Shown: positions 34,402 to 44,880 of the stretch, piece by piece
How the letters are laid out: each line of letters begins with the position of its first letter
How positions within the stretch are numbered: the first letter of the stretch is position 1
From: Adineta vaga
Taxonomy: Eukaryota > Animalia > Rotifera
Direction of reading: 5' to 3'
Assembly (NCBI GenBank): GCA_021613535.1
Contig: CP075493.1
Location: 4,774,001 to 4,838,000, forward strand
DNA length: 64,000 nucleotides
Notes under the pieces: model-generated
What the model saw: the letters and a program-made list of their open reading frames with translations, nothing else
Told to the model about the DNA's origin: nothing
The model's database searches: none
Made by a program: the position numbers and the translations under genes

Positions 34402-35482
34402 TCATATTTTTGGGGAAGTAAGACTATATGAAACTGGACTTGCTGATCTTTTTTTATATCGAACCCATAAAATAATACCCACAACAATTGCCAACAGACA
34501 TTCTACAGCCAATACAACAATAAGTGCAATTGTACCTGCACCAAGTTTGTTATTTTTATCGGATGGTTTCTGTGGACGTTTCGAAGCTAATTGATTAAGT
34601 ATTACACCAAGTCGACGACCACCTTCAGCTAATCGTTGTTCAATTACAGATATACTACGATTGTAATAAATTTCACCTAATGTGAAATTAGCCGAAGCAT
34701 TCATCGTATTATTATATTCATCAACATAGATTTGTGAACAAACAACTTTGACATTATTTTGTATCCATACATCAATATTATTATCATCTTTTCCTGGTGT
34801 TTGTTCAAGCATTAATTTATGAATATAATCATAATAGAGAGATGTATTGGAATGAAAATCACGTCGAAGACGAGTTGTTAACAAACCACTATCCCATAAT
34901 GAATGAAGATTTGTTAGATATGATCCTCCCATATAATGACCTATACAAGAATATATATTTTCTTATTTTTTAACTGCAAATCTCTACTTAACCTTTAACA
35001 CTATTTCCACCACGATCACTAACAAAACCTGTATGCAATGGTTGATGAATATCTCCAGTAAAATGTATTAAAAAATACAATGCTTCTTTTTGTTGAATTT
35101 CATCCCATTCAGTTTCTAATCGTTTCGTATAATTTCGTATTGCACCTGCAACACATACTTCATTGACACAATCTCTTTCTGGTTTATATTCACAATTCCA
35201 ATCAGGTACATTAATATAATGTAATGGTCGAGACCATTGCCAGTTTCCATAACCAGTTGGATTTGCGTCTGAATAGAGTATATCATCTGCCCAAGACGCC
35301 ATCGCACTTAAATTTCTCTGCCAATGCCATGGAATAAGAGGATCAACCCATTTTGAACCTTCAGTACTCAATTGACTTTGAGCAAGACGTACGATTATAC
35401 TATGACCAACAGGTCCCCAACCATGTACAACCAAGTATATTTTCACGAAGAAAACTAAGAACAACCATGATCCTGTGGACAT
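34402..35482 (-). CDS. S1/P1 family Zn nuclease with signal peptide and C-terminal TM anchor
   Basis: WGPVGH mature N-terminus, WADDI, LHYIN, FLIHFTGDIHQPLH, DRGGN, NLHSLWDSG, RLAEGGRRLG. TM IALIVVLAVECLLAIVVGIILW followed by RYKKR. One intron at about 34941-34991. Confidence 0.92.
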
Positions 35483-36351
35483 TTTTTTTGTCTAATCTTG
35501 TTCTTTATCACAATGACAAGAAAACAAAAGTGTATTTAAATGATAAAATAACAAAATAAGAATAACAAAATGAAAGGTAGAGAAAAGAAGATATATCACG
35601 TCATCTTAACATTTTGTTTGAAAAAAAATATTTGAATAACTTATCTATAGATTCAGAATAGATACGATCAATAAAAATAACGACGTTATATATCTGATAA
35701 GTCAATAATTAATCTTCTAAACTTCGAATAATTCTTTTTTTTTTATCAAACTTGATAATAGAATAATACCAATTGCAGTATCGATGGAGTGTCCATACCT
35801 TCAATCTATCTATCAGTAAGTGTTATTTACAGTCATATTTAATCTATATAAAGATCTTTTACAATTCACTCGTACTTTTTTTAGATGATTTATGATTATA
35901 AAAATATGTGATCTTTTTCTTGACGATTTTTTACAGTATTTTATTTTGATCGACAAACTATGTAATTGCAACAATAAGAATGATTTCTATAAAGCAAAAT
36001 AATATCTGTTCTATAAAATGAAAACAACGACATTTTATTCAATACATATATTACGTTGTCAATATTCAATCCTCTTTCAAACATGAATACATATCGCAGA
36101 TCTATTTATATTGAATAGTTACATGAATATGCTTCTATTAATCACTCTCTAGACGAAATATCAATGGACTTTTTCTTTTTCTTTTCTGTTCTTTTCCCTT
36201 CTGTGGACATACATAAAAATACACGCGTACTTTCATTGCTTCAAGGCTGCTGTCGACTTCTGACTAAAAGTTGAAAAAAAAAGTAGGCGAATAACGATTA
36301 TAATATAATCATTTTTCTGTTTTTCTCTGTTCGAAACGAGAGAAGAAAAAT

Positions 36352-38334
36352 ATGTTTGAAATACATCTATCGGGTGAAAATCTTTCATCTTCATCTGTTT
36401 TACCATCCTCAGATACCAATAATGATATTCATGTTATTTTAAGTACGAATCGTACAGCAAAAATTATTTCATCTCTTTGGACTTCTATATTTACTGATGA
36501 TCGTTTACGTTGCCTTTCATTAATTAATCTTCAATTATATCAAAGTGATGCTCGTGTTATTGCAGAATATTTACGTGAACAGAATTATTTGATTGAATTT
36601 ACATTAGATGCTGTTTCTCAATCTGTTTATTCATTTGATCATATACTTAATGAAGGATTACAAAAGAATCGAAGTATACAAAGATTAACTTTATCAAATT
36701 TAGAAAATGTCGATGCAGCAACTATTGCTAGTCTTATACAACATAATGATAGGATTAAATTTTTATCTTTAACACATAATAATATTTCACCTGATGGAGG
36801 TGCACTTATTGCTGATGCACTTCGATCAAATTCAACTTTAATTTCACTCGATTTAAGTCATAACCGAATGGGTAAAAAAGGAGAAATAGAATTTACAAAT
36901 ATACTTCATAGTTCACATCCAAGTTTAACACAAATTCATTTGAATGATAACGATACAAATGATGAAAGTCTACCGATAACAGGTCAATGTTCTGATACAA
37001 CATCATCACCAGAAAGAGAACCCATGATAATAGAAACTAAACCAATGATTACCGATGAAGAATCAACACAAGTGAAAAGCAAATATCAGTTTCTTTCAAC
37101 GCTTCTTGTTACATTTCTATTCTTTCTTTGGGGAATACCAAATCAATTGAATGATGTTTTAATTCGACAATTCTCGAAAGCATTCGTTCTATCTCGTTTT
37201 GAAGCAGGTCTCGTTCAATCAGCATTCTATATTGGATATTTTACTTGGGCTTTACCAGCTGCGTATGTTATTCGTCGTTGGGGTTATAAAACAGGTATTC
37301 TTCTTGGTTTAACTCTGTTCGGATTGGGTGCATGTCTTTTCTGGCCAGCAGCTCTTATTGGACAATATACACCTTTTTTAATTGCACTTTTTATTATTGC
37401 AACTGGTTTAGCTTTTCTTGAAACAGCAGCAAATCCATTCATTGCAAATGTTGCTGGACCAGCACATTCATCCGAAAAACGACTCAATATTGCTCAAGCA
37501 TTTAATCCATTAGGTGCGATTACAGGTGCATTAGTTGGAACATTATTTATCTTTTCTGGTATTGAATTAAACGACGAAGAAATAAAAAAATTACAATCAA
37601 ATAAAACGTATGATGCTTATTTAAAACAAGAAACATTACGCGTTGTCAAACCTTACGTAATTCTGGGTGGCATAACATTCGTATGGGGTTTATTGATTGC
37701 TTTAGTACCATTTCCAGCGAATACAAAAACGACAAAAGAAAAAGCGAATGAAAATAATTCACTTTGTCGACCATTATTTCTATCATCAATTATTGCACAA
37801 TTTGCCTATGTTGGAGCACAAGTTGGTACTTGGTCATATATTATACAATATGCTCAAGATTATGTGAAAGTTGAAGAAAAATTAGGTGGTTATTTATTAA
37901 CAGGAACATTAGTTATGTTTGCAGTTGGTCGTCTAATATCGGCCTTACTTATGCATTTTGGATTTTCACCACCGATACTTCTAGCTTTTTTTTCATTGAT
38001 TAATGTTTTACTTATTGCTATTGCAATTCTTGTACCAAACTCGATTGGCTTTGGTGCATTATTTTTTACATCATTCTTTATGTCATTGATGTTTCCAACG
38101 ATATTTGCCTTGGGAATCAAAGGTATGAGTGGACATACAGCAAAATTAGCTGGTTGTCTTATTGTTATGGCAATTATTGGTGGAGCTGTTATGACACCAT
38201 TGATGGGTTTAATTGCAGTCAAAACTGGACGTCTTTCTTTGGCATATACAGTTCCAGGTGGAGCATATCTGTTGATTGCAATCTATGCACTTTTGGCTTA
38301 TGTATTGACAACAGAACGAAATACGAACTCTTAG
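36352..38334 (+). CDS. Fusion protein: N-terminal RNI-like leucine-rich repeats plus L-fucose:H+ symporter FucP-family MFS permease
   Basis: Single intronless 660-aa ORF. Residues ~50-200 carry 28-aa LRRs (IKFLSLTHNNISPDGGALIADALRSNSTLISLDLSHNRMG). Residues ~245-655 carry FucP motifs: LFFLWG..NQLNDVLIRQF, LVQSAFYIGYF, GYKTGILLGL, FLETAANP, RLNIAQAFNPLG, AQFAYVGAQVGTWS, FMSLMFPTIFALG, VMAIIGGA. Confidence 0.9.
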   Translation: MFEIHLSGENLSSSSVLPSSDTNNDIHVILSTNRTAKIISSLWTSIFTDDRLRCLSLINLQLYQSDARVIAEYLREQNYLIEFTLDAVSQSVYSFDHILNEGLQKNRSIQRLTLSNLENVDAATIASLIQHNDRIKFLSLTHNNISPDGGALIADALRSNSTLISLDLSHNRMGKKGEIEFTNILHSSHPSLTQIHLNDNDTNDESLPITGQCSDTTSSPEREPMIIETKPMITDEESTQVKSKYQFLSTLLVTFLFFLWGIPNQLNDVLIRQFSKAFVLSRFEAGLVQSAFYIGYFTWALPAAYVIRRWGYKTGILLGLTLFGLGACLFWPAALIGQYTPFLIALFIIATGLAFLETAANPFIANVAGPAHSSEKRLNIAQAFNPLGAITGALVGTLFIFSGIELNDEEIKKLQSNKTYDAYLKQETLRVVKPYVILGGITFVWGLLIALVPFPANTKTTKEKANENNSLCRPLFLSSIIAQFAYVGAQVGTWSYIIQYAQDYVKVEEKLGGYLLTGTLVMFAVGRLISALLMHFGFSPPILLAFFSLINVLLIAIAILVPNSIGFGALFFTSFFMSLMFPTIFALGIKGMSGHTAKLAGCLIVMAIIGGAVMTPLMGLIAVKTGRLSLAYTVPGGAYLLIAIYALLAYVLTTERNTNS

Positions 38335-38566
38335 ATAATGTATAATGTGATTCTGTCTCTCTTTTTGTGTTTTTCTCATGAATGAAAATGAATATAGTAC
38401 AAACAAAAGCTGTTTTTTTTAATAACAGACAAAAAGTTAAATTGATAGAAGTGAAGTGACATCTATGTTCAATGTCTACTATACACAGATGTGATGAATG
38501 ATTTTCCGATTGGTTCGTTATTGAAACATTTTCACCTTACCGTCTTTCTGTATGTCTATCTGGTCT

Positions 38567-38575
38567 GTCACGTCA
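38567..38575 (+). promoter_or_regulatory. GTCACGTCA motif about 100 nt upstream of the SLC25A11 start
   Basis: Recurrent upstream motif (see findings). Confidence 0.35.
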
Positions 38576-38673
38576 CTGTCTCGTGGACCTAGTGCACTAT
38601 GAAATGAATAAGTGAATTATGACCTTTTTTCTTATAAGTTTTAGCAATTATAGTGAAAAAAAAAGAGCAGATC

Positions 38674-39891
38674 ATGGTATCGAAATCTCCACAAACTAAT
38701 ATGCCTATGTCAGTTAAATTTTTAATCGGTGGTATGGCTGGGTATGTTTCAACGATTTATTTCAATTATGTTCTATGCATTTCTTTTCTCTTCTAGAATG
38801 TCTGCAACTATGATTGTTAATCCGTTGGATCTAGTCAAAAATCGTATGCAAATGAGTGGTGCCGAAGGTGCAACTAGAGAATATCGATCAACTTTTCATG
38901 CTATAACCACTATTATTCGTAATGAAGGTATTCGTGGTTTATATGCCAGGTAAATTTTTGAGTAAAATGAACCATCAAATTCGTTTGTAGTCTTTCAGCT
39001 GGTTTATTTCGTCAAGCAACGTATACAACTACTCGCTTAGGTGTATATCAAATATTATTAGAACGATATCGTGAGGTTGATGGTCGTCCACCAAAACTCT
39101 CTGTTAATCTTCTTCTGGGCATTATAAGTGGTGGTTTAGGTGCATTCGTTGGTACTCCAGCAGAAGTAGCTTTAGTACGTACGTCACTTGATGGACGATT
39201 ACCGATACATGAAAGAAGAAATTATAAACACGTATTTGATGCTCTGATACGTATTACACATGAAGAAGGTGTCTTGAGATTGTGGCGTGGTGCTATTCCA
39301 ACAGTAGTGCGAGCAATGATTGTCAATGCTGCTCAAATGCCGACATATTCACAAACTAAACAAATGCTAATCTCTGCTGATATAATGCAGCAAGGTTTAT
39401 CTCTACATGTTGCCGCATCATTAGTTGCTGCATTGGTGACAACAACTGTTTCATTACCGATAGATATTATCAAAACACGTTATCAAAATATGAAAGTAAT
39501 ACAAGGCAAACCCGAATACAGTGGAATAGTGGTAAGTTATTCATATCTATGTAAAACAATCATGTTTGGTGAATAGAACAGTTTTATTCAACTTTAATAG
39601 TTCGTAATGACAGATTAATCATTTCTCTTTCCATCTGTCGTTCAGTGATGTGACAGTTGTTAACTTTCTTTTGATTTAATTGCTTGAATATATCTCTGAA
39701 CGTTTATATTTTAGGATGTATTTCAACGAATTCTCCATAAAGAAGGCATACTCAGTTTTTGGAAAGGATTCACTCCTTATTTTTCTCGTCTTGGTCCGCA
39801 TACAATTCTCACCTTCATATTTGTTGAACAGTTTAATGTTCAATATCAAACATACATTTTAAAAAATCAATCTTATTCATCCACTTTATAG
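38674..39891 (+). CDS. SLC25A11: Mitochondrial 2-oxoglutarate/malate carrier
   Basis: VKFLIGGMAG/MSATMIVNPLDLVKNRMQMSG, SLSAGLFRQATYTTTRLG, GTPAEVALVR..LDGRLP...RRNY, LWRGAIPTVVRAMIVNAAQ, LPIDIIKTRYQNM, FWKGFTPYFSRLGPHTILTFIFVEQ. Three introns of about 55, 41 and 183 nt. Confidence 0.93.
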
Positions 39892-39925
39892 AAACATAAT
39901 AAAGTATCGATTATTTATTTTAGAT

Positions 39926-40948
39926 ATGTCATTTGAAGATTTCGCTTCGACATGTACACGTACATTTAGTCAAACACCTATACGTCTTATTCGTATGTCA
40001 TCATCTTTAACTGCTTATGCTGGTTCAATTGATCAACCTTATCGTCATCTTGTTCTTTTATGTCAACCACATTTTACATCGAAATCAATTTCAATTGCAT
40101 TTTATTTGAATGGTACATCTTATTTTGAATATTTAAATGAAAAAACAATTCGACAACGTTTAAGATTATTAAATAATACACGTGATAAATCTGTTCATCT
40201 TGATGATTTAGAAATTATTTTAACACGTTTGAAAACTATGTTAACAATGGATGGAAGTAAACAAGATCAGAATGAATTACATGCAAAACTTTTATCAGCA
40301 ACTCAATTATCAATCGAAATTCATCAAGATAATTTAAAATTTAAATTTCGTTGCGATGAACGACCTGAATTATATGAACAACATTATGTTCGTCAGTTAT
40401 TAATTCAAGTTAAAGAACTATCTGAAAGACAAACCTATCTATGTGAATTGCTAGAACATAAAGATCAATTGCCACAATTCAATGCTCATCTTTTTCTTAA
40501 TACACCAATGACACTTGTTGATGATCAAGAAGGTTTGTGAAGAAAATGTTTATTCCTTTTGTTTTTTTTGGATAAAAGTTTTTCTTTTTTTCAAGATGAT
40601 GATGAAGATGATGAAATTCTATCATCGTCAACAACAGGACATTTATGGAAATCTGCTTTTGGTTCTCGAGGTGGTGCACAATTTCTTGATGTTTGTCTCT
40701 TGAAAAGAGCGTATATGAAAACTTTAGAAGAGATGAGTGATGAAGAAGATGAAGAGAATCAAACAGTTTTATCTGTTATCGATACACTTCTTGATAAAAT
40801 CGACGAACAGGAAGATGAAGACAACATTGGTTTAGCACAACGTCTTGGAAAACGTTCATTAACAACGTCAACAGTGAATTTACATAATGATTTTTCACAA
40901 ACAAAACGATTACGAAGCAATATTTCAAATGCACATATCTCTGTTTAA
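39926..40948 (+). CDS. Divergent XLF/Cernunnos (NHEJ1)-like protein
   Basis: YFEYLNEKTIRQRLRLLN and FKFRCDERPELYEQHYVRQLLIQVKELSERQTYLCELLEHKD..QFNAHLFL align by eye with the XLF motifs W.E.V....V.QRAKELN and WNFHC....LVSQHLIRPL...S..L......L..LL..KD...PFE...FL. Acidic/basic C-terminal tail. One intron at about 40533-40595. Confidence 0.6.
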
Positions 40949-41193: not shown

Positions 41194-42126
41194 ATGGTTT
41201 TAGAAATTGTCGATGCTCATCATCATCTTTGGTCATTATCATCATCGAATCCAGTTAAATATCATTGGCTTCGAGCGGCATCAGAAGGTGGAGCATCATG
41301 GCATCCAGCTGGTGATATTGAGCAATTAAAACAAAATTATTTACTTGAAAATTATCTTCAAGATGCAAACAATTCTTCGTGTCGTTTAATCAAATCAGTC
41401 CATGTTCAAGCTGAAGCGACTGATGCTCTTGAAGAAGTAAAATATCTTGAACAAGTTGCGAATGAAAATTCAAATGGATTTCCACATGGAATTGTAGCAC
41501 ATGCAAATTTAGCTTCACCAGATTTACCAAAATTACTTGAAACTTATACACGTGATTATCCACGTGTGAAAGGTATTCGACAATTATTGAATTGGTCAAC
41601 GAAGGATGCTCGTTTATCGATGACAGATCGAGGAGATTATTTAACTGATAAAACATGGCTTGAAGGTTTTCAATTACTTGTTTCACATTCCTTATCATTT
41701 GATATGCATGTTTATCCATCTCAAATGATCGATGCTGCTAAAGTCGCACGACACTATCCAAATTCTATTCTTATTCTTGATCATTGTGGTTTACCAGTCG
41801 ATGGTCAAAAAGATTTTGACGAATGGAAAGAAGGTATGAAACATATGGCTGAACAAACCAATGTTATTTGTAAATTAAGTGGATTAGTTATGTTTAATCA
41901 TGCTTGGTCAAAAGAAGTCTTATCACCATACATTGCCGAATGTCTTCGTTTATTTACACCAAAACGTTGTATGTTTGGATCAAATTTTCCTGTCGATAGA
42001 TTAAATATTTCCTATGAAGAACTTGTTAATGTCTATCGAGATATTGCAGAAAATGATGCAGAATTATCCAAAGATGAATTGGATTTAATCTTCAAACAAA
42101 ATGCAATTAAAACTTATCGTTTATAA
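41194..42126 (+). CDS. Amidohydrolase_2 / COG3618 family, L-fucono-1,5-lactonase-like; candidate horizontal acquisition
   Basis: Intronless 310 aa. IVDAHHHLW, SVHVQAE, GIVAHANL, VKGIRQLL, LSFDM, ILDHCGLP, NVICKLSG, RCMFGSNFPV, IFKQNAIKTYRL. Confidence 0.85.
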   Translation: MVLEIVDAHHHLWSLSSSNPVKYHWLRAASEGGASWHPAGDIEQLKQNYLLENYLQDANNSSCRLIKSVHVQAEATDALEEVKYLEQVANENSNGFPHGIVAHANLASPDLPKLLETYTRDYPRVKGIRQLLNWSTKDARLSMTDRGDYLTDKTWLEGFQLLVSHSLSFDMHVYPSQMIDAAKVARHYPNSILILDHCGLPVDGQKDFDEWKEGMKHMAEQTNVICKLSGLVMFNHAWSKEVLSPYIAECLRLFTPKRCMFGSNFPVDRLNISYEELVNVYRDIAENDAELSKDELDLIFKQNAIKTYRL

Positions 42127-42218: not shown

Positions 42219-43710
42219 CTAACGTGGTAGAAGATCATCAAGATCGGCAATAGAAAAAGCATAAACTGCCCATACAGCAGCTGCTAAATCAACATCAGTT
42301 GAATTAAGTACATTCATTGTATCACCATTCGAATGATGATATGCAAAATAATCCCAATTATCATTCAGAAGTGATGCACCGGGAACACCACGTTGCATCC
42401 ATGGACTGATATCTTCACCTCCACCACCACTAACAACTTGTGTAGCATTGATTGACACTAATTGATTGGAGATCGTTTGTATGATCTAATAGAGAGGAGA
42501 AAATAGTTTCGTTATCATCTATTAAATGTTATCTTACTTGTTGTGCTTGAGGTTTACCTTGAAATTGAAGACCTTGAGGATGAAAGACACCTAGATCGGA
42601 TTCCATAACAATACTCATTGTTGATATTTCATTGGTATGAGCTTTGAAATATTGATCGGCACCAACACCACCAAATTCTTCACATGACCAAAGAACACAA
42701 CGAACAGTACGTTTTGCTCGAACATCTAATGCACGAAGTAGAGATAGAACTGTCCAAGAGATCATTGCACCACCACCATCATCCATCGCTCCTTCATAAA
42801 GAAAAGAATTTAAAATAATATAAATAGAAATCACTTCTTTAATTTTACCTTGACCAACATCCCAACTGTCAAGATGACCGCTGACAAGAACAGTTTCATT
42901 TGGTTTACTGGAACCTTTGATTTCCGCTACGAGATTATAACCGATGACATCAGGTAGCGTTTGTGCTTCCATATAGAGAAATATTTCTATCGATTGATTT
43001 CGTTGTTGAAAACGATCCAACATATCTGTATGTTCGACGGAAAGTGATCCAGCTGGAATCTTTGGATATGATAAATCATAGGCCATCACACCAGTATGTG
43101 GTGAATCAATCGAACGTGATGCAGCTGATCGACTAAGAGAAGCAACTGCACCACATTTCGCTGCACTCGATGCTCCACCAACACGATAACCAACTACGGG
43201 ACCATAGCAAGCAACGGGTTTCGTTTTCCAATCACATTGTGGATTAAAAACAACGATTTTATTTCGTGCTTCAGCACATCTTGCATTCAATTCATCGAAG
43301 GATCGAACAACAAGAACTGGTGCACGAATACCTTGTGGTCCTGTACCAACAGAATTACCGAGACCAAGCATTGATAATTTTGTATTTCGTGGTTGTAATA
43401 ATTGAGCACGTTCTTCACCACGTACCCAATGAGGTATACGAACTTCTTCTGCATGAACATTATCTAAACCTTCAGCAGTCATGGTATTTTTTACCCAATT
43501 GACTGCATTTGTTAAAGATTCATTACCGCATAAACGGGGACCAATGGTATCGACTAAGGCAGCTAAACGATTGTAAGTAACACCACGAAAAGCACCTTGT
43601 GTAACTAATTCAATTAAACGATCTGATACAGCATTGGATGAATGATTCTCAGTAAGAATTGAACGACTTGTTACACTTATTATTGAAAGTAGAATGAGCA
43701 GCCAATGCAT
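42219..43710 (-). CDS. CPQ: Carboxypeptidase Q (plasma glutamate carboxypeptidase, M28 family)
   Basis: Signal peptide, LVDTIGPRLCG, HWVRGEE, LGLGNSVGT, SPHTG, SGHLDSWDVGQ/GAMDDGGG, EEFGGVG, MESDLG, YHHSNGDTM. Two introns, the first in frame and stop-free. Confidence 0.93.
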
Positions 43711-44880
43711 ATTTTTATCACCACAACAAATATGTCTCACGACGAAATGGCCAAAAAAAAGAGAATTAGACTCACTTTTTGATAAACAATATTTGTTTTA
43801 TATTCTATATTTTACCTTTTCTTTATCAAAGGTAATAGAATGATTAAAGTTATTGTCGACTATCAGTTAACTTTACTCGTAGTTATTATTTATGGCCATA
43901 ATGCAACTATCTGTATGCAGATTGGTTACAGATTTCCGGAAGAAATAATGTTCGGATTCTTTTAGTTAACGATTACAATTATTCGCATTATATTGTGTAA
44001 TAATAAAAATCAGTGTGATTTAAAATTGCACTTTATCTATAGATTCATTCTGGTGATGAGAGAAATTTCATCGATATTAATTTACGTTGTTTATCTTGAT
44101 CTATCGAATTGGCTTGCTCGACAATATCAATAGTTACAGCAGTTAAGTGAAACTGTGTATGAGCAAATATACATCTTGCAATCATGATGATTAACTATCC
44201 AGACAAATCAAATGCATCATTTTGATGGACACACTTAGTTACTACCACATTTATTACCATACAAATGTAACAGTTTTCCTCTGTATGTACTAAAATTCGA
44301 AGAACTCTCTTACTAGTGACAATGTAACGGTTTTCAAATAACCATATGATTGTATTCACGTAGATAGGTGCATTCTGATATCGTATTACAGCACACATCA
44401 TTCACGTAAATGTTCAAAACTATTTATCCCTACCTGATGGTTAAAATAATATTCCAAAATTTTGCTCAGCTAGCAAAGATCTATATTATTCAAATCAAAT
44501 GCGATAATGAAAGAACTCAACAACTCTACTAATTTTAACATTTGCGGAACTAATTCAAACACGAAATGCTTGTCAAGTATACCATGAAATTTGCTTCTGT
44601 ACTACCAAACAAAACTAGATAGTACCTGTTCATGCTGAAGCTACTGAAACTTCAATTTCAAGATGCGAATAAATTCTGTGAGAATATTATTTCCCGAAAA
44701 AAAACCTTCCTAATCCAAATATGTTATCGCTAAAAAGAGATTTCATATAACAATCAAATCTCATTTATTATAATAATGAAGATATACGGCTAAACATCTG
44801 TTCTACAAATTAATTATTTTGATCTTTTTTTACTACTGAACACCATATAAATTGTCTAAAAAATCCACATAGAAATGATT

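What the first reader, a model, noticed from the sequence alone, without database searches (positions are those of the whole stretch)
36352..38334. Chimeric LRR-FucP gene: eukaryotic NLR-type leucine-rich repeats fused to a bacterial-type L-fucose permease
Seen: one uninterrupted, intron-free 660-aa ORF with RNI/NLRC3-like 28-aa LRRs, an acidic linker, and a complete 12-TM MFS domain with FucP motifs. Established: FucP/FHS symporters of this type are typical of bacteria and fungi and normally have no large soluble domain, and MFS N-termini are cytosolic. Inference: a foreign sugar transporter has acquired a cytosolic LRR module. It could be a regulated transporter or a 'transceptor' that senses fucose or other bacterial/algal sugars. 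I know of no described protein with this architecture.
Basis: partly seen in the sequence, partly recalled or inferred. Interest (0 to 1): 0.85.

Follow-up and report, generated by a model that had tools for sequence, protein, structure and literature searches.

The report
Rotifer fucose transporter fused to LRR
A bdelloid rotifer gene joins a sugar (L-fucose) transporter taken from soil bacteria to an animal-type leucine-rich-repeat protein-binding domain; the hybrid is transcribed, is kept in every bdelloid genome sampled, and has a domain combination that I found in no other organism and no paper.

Summary
Window 36352-38334 (+) is one intronless 660-aa ORF. Residues 1-200 form a ribonuclease-inhibitor-type LRR solenoid. 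Residues 205-241 are a disordered acidic linker. Residues 242-660 are a 12-helix MFS domain that passes NCBIfam's FucP equivalog cut-off and keeps both FucP carboxylates (D268, E357).

RNA-like contigs cover 36250-38399, and one contig bridges the LRR/MFS junction. A poly(A) end lies at 38408.

The same fused, intronless gene occurs in Adineta ricciae, A. steineri, five Rotaria species, Didymodactylos carnosus and dozens of environmental contigs. In an ML tree the transporter halves form one clade nested inside Acidobacteriota FucPs (53-59% identity). This points to one ancient bacterial transfer and a fusion before the bdelloid radiation. The LRR half is as constrained as the transporter half (dN/dS 0.09 versus 0.08).

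Most likely function: a proton-coupled fucose importer whose cytosolic LRR, plus a conserved acidic Pro-hydrophobic linker motif, mediates trafficking or regulation. This is inferred, not shown. A sensor ("transceptor") role is not excluded; several lineages, including Rotaria, have lost the proton-site Asp.

It is not an NLR, because there is no NACHT domain. The scan had already noted this stretch as s1-489810.

The parts
36250..36351 (+). 5' untranslated leader. It is the minimum extent seen in RNA-like contigs and contains no upstream ATG.
   Evidence: X1 record 1 covers 36250-36613, with zero X1 depth upstream of about 36202; no ATG in 36250-36351.
36352..36951 (+). Residues 1-200: cytosolic ribonuclease-inhibitor-type LRR domain of about 7 repeats with a period near 28 aa.
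   Evidence: Searches support the fold. It is conserved full-length in about 38 orthologues. dN/dS is 0.09 against A. ricciae.
36964..37074 (+). Residues 205-241: acidic, disordered linker.
   Evidence: pLDDT is 31-37. Mean identity among orthologues is 23% and length varies from 17 to 44 aa.
37012..37029 (+). Residues 221-226 (E-R-E-P-M-I): a conserved short linear motif of acidic, Pro and two hydrophobic residues. It resembles an acidic di-leucine [DE]xxxL[LI] sorting signal.
   Evidence: The core motif is in 29 of 40 orthologue linkers against 3.4 expected (maximum 9) in 500 shuffles. The reading as a sorting signal is inference from my own knowledge.
37075..38331 (+). Residues 242-660: 12-TM MFS domain of the FHS family, FucP type, of acidobacterial origin.
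   Evidence: for family membership. for the helices. for nesting in Acidobacteriota.
37153..37155 (+). Codon for D268, equivalent to E. coli FucP Asp46, the putative H+ site.
   Evidence: Alignment. The role of D46 is from PMC4882079. The residue is kept in Adineta and replaced in Rotaria and other lineages.
37420..37422 (+). Codon for E357, equivalent to E. coli FucP Glu135.
   Evidence: Alignment. The residue is invariant in all 56 and 125 aligned sequences except one distant Q.
38332..38408 (+). Stop codon and short 3' UTR ending at a poly(A) site.
   Evidence: the X5 contig ends at 38408 followed by A12, and X1 coverage ends at 38399.

Best explanation
This is a real, expressed, bdelloid-wide chimeric gene. 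SHOWN: an acidobacterial-type L-fucose:H+ symporter gene (FucP, FHS family of the MFS) entered the bdelloid lineage once. It became joined in frame to a eukaryote-type RI-like LRR domain, and it has been inherited vertically as an intronless fused gene ever since. Both halves are under strong purifying selection, and the gene is transcribed as one mRNA. INFERRED: the protein sits in a rotifer membrane with the topology of E. coli FucP, with the N-terminus, and therefore the LRR, in the cytosol. In Adineta it carries L-fucose or a close 6-deoxyhexose inward with a proton. This would occur across the gut/apical membrane or out of acidic digestive or endolysosomal compartments. The LRR solenoid and the conserved acidic Pro-hydrophobic-hydrophobic motif in the flexible linker would act as protein-interaction handles. 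Through them host machinery would sort, anchor or regulate a transporter that, being bacterial, arrived without eukaryotic trafficking or regulatory signals. The imported fucose probably feeds catabolism. A conserved COG3618 L-fuconolactonase-like gene lies 3 kb downstream.
For: The ORF and its domains are confirmed.

Transcription: contigs of run X1 are absent from both intergenic flanks and cover 36250-38399. One contig spans 36613-37619. A poly(A) end is at 38408, and the neighbouring gene is spliced in run X6.

Conservation: about 47 clusters of 597-696 aa share the same architecture. Named sources are A. ricciae, A. steineri, Rotaria sp. Silwood-1 and Silwood-2, R. sordida, R. socialis, R. 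magnacalcarata and D. carnosus. All three orthologues checked (A. ricciae, Rotaria sp. Silwood-1, D. carnosus) are intronless. Synteny (S1/P1 nuclease | LRR-FucP | Mito_carr | XLF | Amidohydro_2 | M28) is identical in A. ricciae.

Origin: the closest non-rotifer proteins are Acidobacteriaceae/Terriglobia FucPs at 53-59% identity. In the tree, the fusions form one clade (SH-aLRT 96) inside a clade of Acidobacteriota plus a few Bacteroidota (SH-aLRT 100). D. carnosus is sister to the rest, as in the species tree (PMC7943196). Composition is fully host-like: GC 29-35% against 52-60% in the bacterial homologues.

Selection: dN/dS against A. ricciae is 0.09 for the LRR, 0.21 for the linker and 0.08 for the MFS. 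Allelic or strain SNPs are 12 synonymous to 3 conservative.

Function: the gene passes the FucP equivalog cut-off and keeps D268 and E357. The linker motif is enriched. The Amidohydro_2 neighbour's only PDB match is the 4DLF family, at E = 3e-14.
Against: No transport, localisation or binding data exist. Substrate is inferred from family membership alone, at 40-45% identity to E. coli FucP. Contig data cannot exclude a minor internal-start, permease-only isoform; run X5 covers only 37561-38408. The sorting-signal reading of the linker motif rests on resemblance. Orthologues are phylogenetically non-independent, so the shuffle test overstates its significance. The origin of the LRR half could not be traced. 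The best paralogues in the same genome are only 26-38% identical. A eukaryotic source is inferred from the fold class and from the nearest hits. dS is close to 1, so dN/dS values are approximate.
Confidence: 0.62

Rival explanations
1. Transceptor. The FucP domain acts mainly as a fucose (microbial or algal sugar) receptor. Its conformational change is read out by partners bound to the cytosolic LRR, by analogy with the yeast transporter-like sensors. Transport would be secondary or lost.
For: A large, strongly constrained cytosolic protein-interaction domain has been added to a transporter that normally has none. The proton-site Asp (E. coli D46) has been replaced by Gly, Asn or Ser at least 4 separate times inside the fused clade (7 of 31 rows) against 1 of 53 bacterial relatives. 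The substrate-site Glu stays invariant. This pattern is expected if binding matters more than H+-coupled accumulation.
Against: The window's own protein, and all Adineta orthologues, keep both carboxylates and pass the FucP equivalog threshold. Loss of the Asp is equally compatible with a switch to facilitated diffusion. No signalling partner or output is known.
Confidence: 0.17
2. Cis-autoregulation. The LRR docks on the cytosolic face of its own MFS domain as a plug or gate, released by a signal or a partner.
For: A 17-44 aa flexible linker would allow this. Both domains co-evolve in one polypeptide.
Against: The full-length AlphaFold model has two confident domains but pTM of only 0.61, which indicates no confident inter-domain packing. 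Nothing else bears on it.
Confidence: 0.1
3. Only the permease is made. Translation or transcription starts at an internal Met (M225 or M232), and the LRR-coding part is a leader or a decaying relic.
For: In-frame Mets exist at residues 225 and 232. Run X5 covers only the 3' third of the gene.
Against: The LRR half has dN/dS 0.09. It keeps an open frame and the same M-x-E-I start in about 40 orthologues across the whole bdelloid radiation. RNA-like contigs cover it in runs X1 and X6. An untranslated region would not stay open and constrained at third-position-only variation.
Confidence: 0.03
4. Artefact. The ORF is an assembly chimera, bacterial contamination, or an ordinary animal MFSD4-type gene.
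For: None found.
Against: The gene lies in a chromosome-scale contig between intron-bearing animal genes. Independent DNA and RNA contigs cross the junction. The same fusion and synteny occur in other species' assemblies. Composition is host-like. The gene is nested in bacterial FucP.
Confidence: 0.01

Closest known systems
E. coli L-fucose:H+ symporter FucP (PDB 3O7Q; FHS family, TIGR00885) and its Acidobacteriota orthologues
   Same: The whole 12-TM domain aligns over residues 240-647 at E = 4.6e-86. It scores above the equivalog cut-off and keeps the Asp46 and Glu135 equivalents. Identity to Acidobacteriaceae FucPs is 53-59%.
   Different: Bacterial FucPs are 420-475 aa with no soluble domain. 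This protein carries a 200-aa LRR plus a linker at the N-terminus, lies in an animal genome, is AT-rich and has eukaryotic mRNA ends.
Ribonuclease-inhibitor-like LRR domains (RNH1, LRRC34, the LRRs of NOD2 and NLRPs, tropomodulin/leiomodin LRR = PF27087)
   Same: The repeat period, motif (LxxLxLxxNxI...G...L..AL..N..L) and fold match. TMq is up to 0.79, and sequence E-values go down to 3e-18. Precomputed Pfam hits to PF27087 appear in the orthologues.
   Different: There are only about 7 repeats. No NACHT, PYD, CARD or tropomodulin actin-binding parts are present. The domain is covalently attached to a membrane transporter.
Yeast transporter-like nutrient sensors and transceptors (Snf3/Rgt2, Gap1, Pho84; review PMC3824880 listed)
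   Same: The concept is shared: an MFS sugar-transporter fold bearing an extra cytosolic module that could couple substrate occupancy to signalling.
   Different: There is no homology of the extension. Yeast uses disordered C-terminal tails, whereas this protein has a folded N-terminal LRR. No functional evidence exists here.
Other horizontally acquired, domesticated bacterial genes of bdelloid rotifers (for example PMC11912409, listed)
   Same: The gene is bacterial in origin, fully ameliorated in composition, conserved across bdelloids and expressed.
   Different: Here the foreign gene is fused in frame to a host-type domain to give a new architecture. I found no described precedent for a transporter of this kind.

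Membership tests
FucP / FHS family of MFS (TIGR00885 equivalog) | Whole-protein score above the curated equivalog cut-off | tested here: met
   355.1 bits against a cut-off of 280.4, residues 251-646. The stricter E. coli-centred model NF007524 is not reached (311 against 427).
FucP / FHS family of MFS (TIGR00885 equivalog) | 12 transmembrane helices in two six-helix bundles | tested here: met
   The AlphaFold model shows 12 long helices between residues 242 and 659 at pLDDT mostly 83-98, with a central loop at 452-473.
FucP / FHS family of MFS (TIGR00885 equivalog) | The two cavity carboxylates, Asp46 (H+ site) and Glu135 | tested here: met
   D268 and E357 align to D46 and E135 of 3O7Q. The role of D46 is from PMC4882079. 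Rotaria orthologues lack the Asp.
FucP / FHS family of MFS (TIGR00885 equivalog) | Phylogenetic placement among bona fide FucPs | tested here: met
   Nested in a clade of Acidobacteriota and Bacteroidota FucPs with SH-aLRT 100.
FucP / FHS family of MFS (TIGR00885 equivalog) | H+-coupled L-fucose transport | not testable with these tools
   Needs an uptake assay.
Ribonuclease-inhibitor-like LRR (Pfam LRR_6 class) | Repeats of about 28 aa with alternating beta-strand and alpha-helix and the RI-type consensus | tested here: met
   Strand starts are at residues 2, 26, 52, 82, 111, 137, 165 and 194. LRR_6 scores 24.5 bits against 23.4. The consensus is visible in the alignment.
Ribonuclease-inhibitor-like LRR (Pfam LRR_6 class) | Curved solenoid fold superposable on RI or NLR LRRs | tested here: met
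   Foldseek gives probability 1.00, TMq 0.79 to 1DFJ and 0.73-0.76 to NLRP LRRs.
NLR (NOD-like receptor) family | Central NACHT/NB-ARC nucleotide-binding domain | tested here: not met
   No such domain appears in the Pfam scan of the whole protein at E <= 0.1. The 660 aa are fully accounted for by the LRR, linker and MFS. The protein is not an NLR.
Tropomodulin/leiomodin LRR (PF27087) | Match to the family model, and actin pointed-end capping context | tested here: inconclusive
   Precomputed PF27087 hits, some weak or faint, are on the orthologues. My Pfam copy did not report it. Tropomodulin 1IO0 scores only E = 7e-4, against 3e-18 for LRRC34.
Horizontally transferred gene domesticated in an animal | Nested within a donor clade, integrated beside native intron-bearing genes, with host-like composition and expression | tested here: met
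Horizontally transferred gene domesticated in an animal | Absent from other animals, including non-bdelloid rotifers | tested here: inconclusive
   No named non-bdelloid animal appears among the best 150 or 120 hits. Genomes of monogononts, seisonids and acanthocephalans were not searched directly.
Nutrient transceptor | Substrate-dependent signalling independent of transport | not testable with these tools
   The only data are circumstantial: the extra cytosolic domain and recurrent loss of the H+ Asp.

The most novel reading that the evidence does not exclude
The LRR-FucP is a new kind of animal nutrient or microbe sensor built from a stolen bacterial transporter. The FucP domain binds fucose, a signature sugar of bacterial, algal and fungal glycans that bdelloids eat. 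The RI-type LRR transmits occupancy to cytosolic partners. Lineages such as Rotaria have dropped proton coupling altogether and work as pure receptors or facilitators.
Probability: 0.17. Interest if true: 0.85.

Novelty: new variant of a known kind. Interest (0 to 1): 0.62.

Why it matters
Horizontal transfer into bdelloids is well known. How a bacterial membrane protein becomes a working part of an animal cell is much less clear. This gene is a clean, datable example. There was one transfer from soil Acidobacteria, organisms that share the moss and peat habitat. That was followed by an in-frame fusion to a host-type protein-interaction domain, and the product has been kept intact through the whole bdelloid radiation.

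It offers a tractable test of two alternatives. Added eukaryotic modules may supply sorting and regulation to foreign transporters. Or a transporter may have been turned into a receptor.

An MFS sugar transporter with an N-terminal LRR solenoid appears to be a new domain architecture. The natural D-to-G replacements at the proton site in Rotaria provide ready-made variants for asking what the protein does. With the conserved lactonase-like neighbour, the gene also hints that bdelloids assembled a fucose-utilisation capacity from foreign genes.

Tried and rejected
- Complex prediction, LRR (1-205) against MFS (242-660): no answer, ipSAE 0.00 in two runs, and controls were not run. This is neither support for nor evidence against docking.
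- Literature: searches for bdelloid + fucose permease, rotifer + fucose + HGT + transporter, LRR + MFS fusion, and bdelloid + major facilitator found nothing on this gene.
- ESM Atlas feature search returned only plain bacterial FucP clusters, with no LRR+MFS cluster of 50 or more members.
- 'No-LRR' close relatives P0237, P0234 and P0242 looked like possible unfused intermediates. P0237 is simply cut by the end of its contig and has the same Mito_carr/XLF neighbours. All three fall inside the fusion clade.
- A contig in runs X5 and X8 that matches the window only from 37613 onward suggested a truncated second copy. Its other part maps to C4:10306308, and the two loci share only a 21-nt chance similarity. 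It is a mapping or graph artefact.
- Co-transfer of fucP with the neighbouring Amidohydro_2 gene is not supported. Acidobacterial loci do carry an Amidohydro_2 gene next to fucP, but it is only 25-31% identical. The rotifer gene's best bacterial relatives (about 40%) are labelled Alphaproteobacteria.
- dN/dS for the A. vaga-Rotaria and A. vaga-Didymodactylos pairs gave inconsistent dS values (0.5-1.5), a sign of saturation or composition effects. I use only the A. vaga-A. ricciae pair, and with caution.
The genome has four enolase-superfamily matches, but I did not establish that any is an L-fuconate dehydratase, so I dropped this.
- The intron-bearing second FucP paralogue (L002) was used as exon 1 only.
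Full report
**1. The observation**

The ORF listing finds one uninterrupted ORF at 36352..38334 on the + strand. It is 660 aa with an ATG start. Base composition across it (GC 29-37%) is the same as the surroundings.

NCBIfam places residues 251-646 in TIGR00885, the fucP equivalog, at 355.1 bits against a curated cut-off of 280.4. Pfam gives MFS_1 (2.7e-22) and a marginal LRR_6 (24.5 bits against 23.4) at residues 159-177.

A phmmer search of PDB sequences gives E. coli FucP 3O7Q at 4.6e-86 over residues 240-647. For residues 31-212 it gives a long list of ribonuclease-inhibitor-class LRR proteins: LRRC34 at 3e-18, RI, NOD2, NLRP5, NLRX1, RanGAP and tropomodulin.

AlphaFold2 with a 56-sequence alignment gives three parts:
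- a confident LRR solenoid at residues 1-200, with 8 strands and 7 helices at a spacing of 26-30 residues;
- a disordered linker at 205-241 (pLDDT 31-37);
- 12 long helices between 242 and 659.

The LRR folded alone has pLDDT 90.5 and pTM 0.89. It superposes on ribonuclease inhibitor at TMq 0.79 and on NLRP and NOD2 LRRs. The one correction is that nothing beyond the repeat class links it to NLRs, since there is no NACHT domain.

**2. It is a real, transcribed gene, not a chimera**

The window is part of a 100.8-Mb genome in 6 contigs.

Contigs of four public runs were laid on 35500-39000:
- Run X1 has no coverage of either intergenic flank. It covers 36250-38399 without a gap. One 1007-nt contig spans 36613-37619, right across the LRR/linker/MFS junction.
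- Run X5 ends at 38408 followed by a run of A, which marks a poly(A) site.
- Run X6, labelled as a different organism, covers parts of both halves and shows a GT..AG splice in the next gene downstream.
- Run X8, a DNA run from 2013, covers everything and has a contig across 36536-37133.

These are Logan contigs, so they cannot give transcript ends or levels. They do show that the LRR-coding part is in RNA and is contiguous with the permease part. There is no ATG in 36250-36351, so 36352 is the first start codon of that RNA. Of the 15 allelic or strain differences inside the ORF, 12 are synonymous and 3 are conservative.

**3. The fusion is shared by all sampled bdelloids**

An exhaustive phmmer search of 1.84 billion representatives found two full-length matches: a 667-aa protein 70% identical from end to end, and a 616-aa protein 40% identical covering both domains. 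Their sources are Rotaria sp. Silwood-1 and Didymodactylos carnosus.

Word-indexed searches with each half found about 47 clusters of 597-696 aa with the same architecture. Named sources include Adineta ricciae, A. steineri, Rotaria sp. Silwood-2, R. sordida and R. socialis, plus a fragment from R. magnacalcarata. Many soil and freshwater metagenome contigs also carry it.

The genes of A. ricciae, Rotaria sp. Silwood-1 and D. carnosus are each a single exon. In A. ricciae the whole neighbourhood matches the window: S1/P1 nuclease (-), LRR-FucP, mitochondrial carrier, XLF-like, Amidohydro_2, M28 peptidase (-). An environmental contig at 64% identity shows the same downstream genes.

The D. carnosus proteins have a shorter, divergent but homologous N-terminal LRR (pairwise E = 1e-6 and 4e-8). 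D. carnosus is sister to the other sequenced bdelloids (PMC7943196). The fusion therefore predates the radiation of the sampled bdelloids.

The genome is almost certainly Adineta vaga or a very close relative.

**4. Origin of the two halves**

The best non-rotifer relatives of the MFS half in 185,579 species genomes are almost all Acidobacteriaceae/Terriglobia, at 53-59% identity.

I built a maximum-likelihood tree of 125 sequences (IQ-TREE, LG+C20 PMSF, quick search, SH-aLRT support). Its main features are:
- All fusion proteins form one clade (support 96).
- Didymodactylos is sister to the rest within that clade.
- The clade is nested inside an 88-sequence clade (support 100) that otherwise holds Acidobacteriota and a few Bacteroidota.
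- Proteobacterial, Verrucomicrobial and other FucPs lie outside.

This indicates a single transfer from an acidobacterium-like donor, followed by vertical descent. The gene is now fully host-like in composition: GC 34.6% and GC3 17%, against GC 52-60% and GC3 58-81% in the bacterial homologues.

A second FucP-like gene in the same genome (C3:6365077-6366333) is only 35% identical. It has an intron and no LRR, and it branches elsewhere.

The LRR half has no close free-standing relative. The best matches in the same genome are 26-38% identical. Outside the fusions the nearest proteins are eukaryotic RI-like LRR proteins such as TCTE1 and a fish giant LRR protein. No bacterial FucP in any search carried an LRR. 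A host origin of the LRR is therefore likely but not demonstrated.

**5. Selection and functional residues**

Between the window and A. ricciae, Nei-Gojobori dN/dS is 0.09 for the LRR, 0.21 for the linker and 0.08 for the MFS domain, at dS near 1. The LRR is as constrained as the transporter, so it is translated and functional.

The E. coli FucP carboxylates Asp46 and Glu135 correspond to D268 and E357. Asp46 is the putative proton-binding residue of FucP (PMC4882079). E357 is invariant.

D268 is kept in Adineta. It is replaced by Gly, Asn or Ser in the Rotaria clade, in two environmental lineages and in one D. carnosus paralogue. That is 7 of 31 fusion-clade rows against 1 of 53 bacterial relatives, with at least 4 changes inside the rotifer clade.

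The linker is otherwise only 23% conserved and varies from 17 to 44 aa. It nonetheless carries an acidic, Pro, hydrophobic, hydrophobic motif, which is E-R-E-P-M-I in the window (residues 221-226). The motif occurs in 29 of 40 orthologues against 3.4 expected from shuffling. From my own knowledge, this resembles acidic di-leucine [DE]xxxL[LI] signals with Pro at -1, as found in endolysosomal membrane proteins. That reading is a lead, not a test.

**6. How it most likely works**

Shown: a FucP-type transporter domain with intact key residues, a cytosol-type LRR domain, a flexible linker with a conserved motif, one mRNA, and strong constraint on both halves.

Inferred from the known FucP topology (both termini cytoplasmic): the LRR faces the cytosol. 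The most economical reading is a proton-coupled fucose or 6-deoxyhexose importer. A proton symporter makes sense at an acidified gut surface or in digestive or endolysosomal membranes, where it would move sugar into the cytosol. In this reading the LRR and linker motif supply the sorting, anchoring or regulatory contacts that a bacterial protein lacks.

The conserved neighbour at 41194-42126 fits a catabolic fate for the sugar:
- It is an Amidohydro_2 protein whose only PDB relative is the 4DLF/4DLM/4DNM/4DO7 family (E = 3e-14). From memory, that family is the COG3618 L-fucono-1,5-lactonase.
- It is bdelloid-wide, and its nearest bacterial relatives are about 40% identical.
- Homologues at 25-31% identity sit next to fucP in several bacterial loci.
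- The genome also has GH29 fucosidase genes.

The main rival is a transceptor role. It is made more plausible by the recurrent loss of the proton-site Asp with retention of everything else.

**7. Comparison and novelty**

The MFS half is a member of the FucP/FHS family by every sequence and fold criterion I could test. The N-terminal half is an RI-like LRR and not an NLR.

The combination was not found outside bdelloids in searches of 1.84 and 5.8 billion proteins, or in the ESM Atlas clusters. It was not found in the literature searched. Public records call these proteins 'unnamed protein product' or generic MFS proteins.

I rate it a new variant of known kinds: a horizontally acquired bdelloid gene and a FucP transporter, with a new architecture. 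It is not categorically new.

**8. Limits**

- All expression evidence is from assembled contigs, not reads.
- The tree is a quick search.
- Non-bdelloid rotifer genomes were not searched directly.
- Substrate, localisation and LRR partners are unknown.
- The complex prediction gave no answer.

Noticed in passing
window 41194-42126 (+): An intronless 310-aa Amidohydro_2 ORF lies 3 kb downstream on the same strand. Its only PDB relative is the 4DLF/4DNM family (E = 3e-14), which from memory is the COG3618 L-fucono-1,5-lactonase. It is conserved in Adineta, Rotaria and Didymodactylos, and often sits on the same contig as the LRR-FucP. The nearest bacterial relatives are about 40% identical and are labelled Alphaproteobacteria. 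It is therefore probably a separate ancient transfer rather than a co-transfer.
   Followed up: partly
window 37153-37155 (D268) and orthologues P0001, P0209, P0211, P0215, P0235, P0236, P0003: The equivalent of the FucP proton-site Asp46 is replaced by Gly, Asn or Ser in Rotaria and other lineages, with at least 4 independent changes. In the acidobacterial relatives it is almost never replaced. The Glu135 equivalent is invariant. This suggests repeated loss of H+ coupling after the fusion.
   Followed up: partly
window 37012-37029 (residues 221-226, E-R-E-P-M-I): A short acidic, Pro, hydrophobic, hydrophobic motif is the only conserved element of the otherwise variable, disordered linker. It is found in 29 of 40 orthologues against 3.4 expected by shuffling. 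It resembles an acidic di-leucine sorting signal.
   Followed up: partly
window 35582-36195 (+), intron 35816-35884: Run X5 has low-depth contigs in the 870-bp divergent intergenic region upstream of the gene. They include a GT..AG joint that skips 69 nt on the + strand. This could be a long spliced 5' leader, an upstream non-coding RNA, or DNA carry-over. It does not add coding sequence, because the frame closes 16 codons upstream of the ATG.
   Followed up: no
G000:C3:6365077-6366333 (-) = L002: A second FucP-like gene in the same genome is 35% identical, has at least one intron and no LRR. In the tree it groups with long unnamed sequences away from the acidobacterial clade, so it probably has a different origin. 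Only its first exon was used.
   Followed up: partly
window 36188: Contigs of both a DNA run (X8) and run X5 diverge from the window at 36188 into the same unlike sequence. This is probably an indel or a divergent haplotype in the promoter region.
   Followed up: no
window 34988-35482 (-), 38657-39900 (+), 39926-40540 (+), 42529-43740 (-): The neighbours are ordinary animal-type genes: S1/P1 nuclease, a mitochondrial carrier with introns (splice 38740/38796 seen in RNA), an XLF-like protein and an M28 peptidase. Their order is conserved in A. ricciae.
   Followed up: partly
window 36352-36966 versus 37075-38331: Third-position GC is twice as high in the transporter half (17%) as in the LRR half (8%) and the XLF exon (9%). 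The Amidohydro_2 ORF is intermediate-high at 15%. This may be a faint compositional trace of foreign origin or an amino-acid and codon effect.
   Followed up: no
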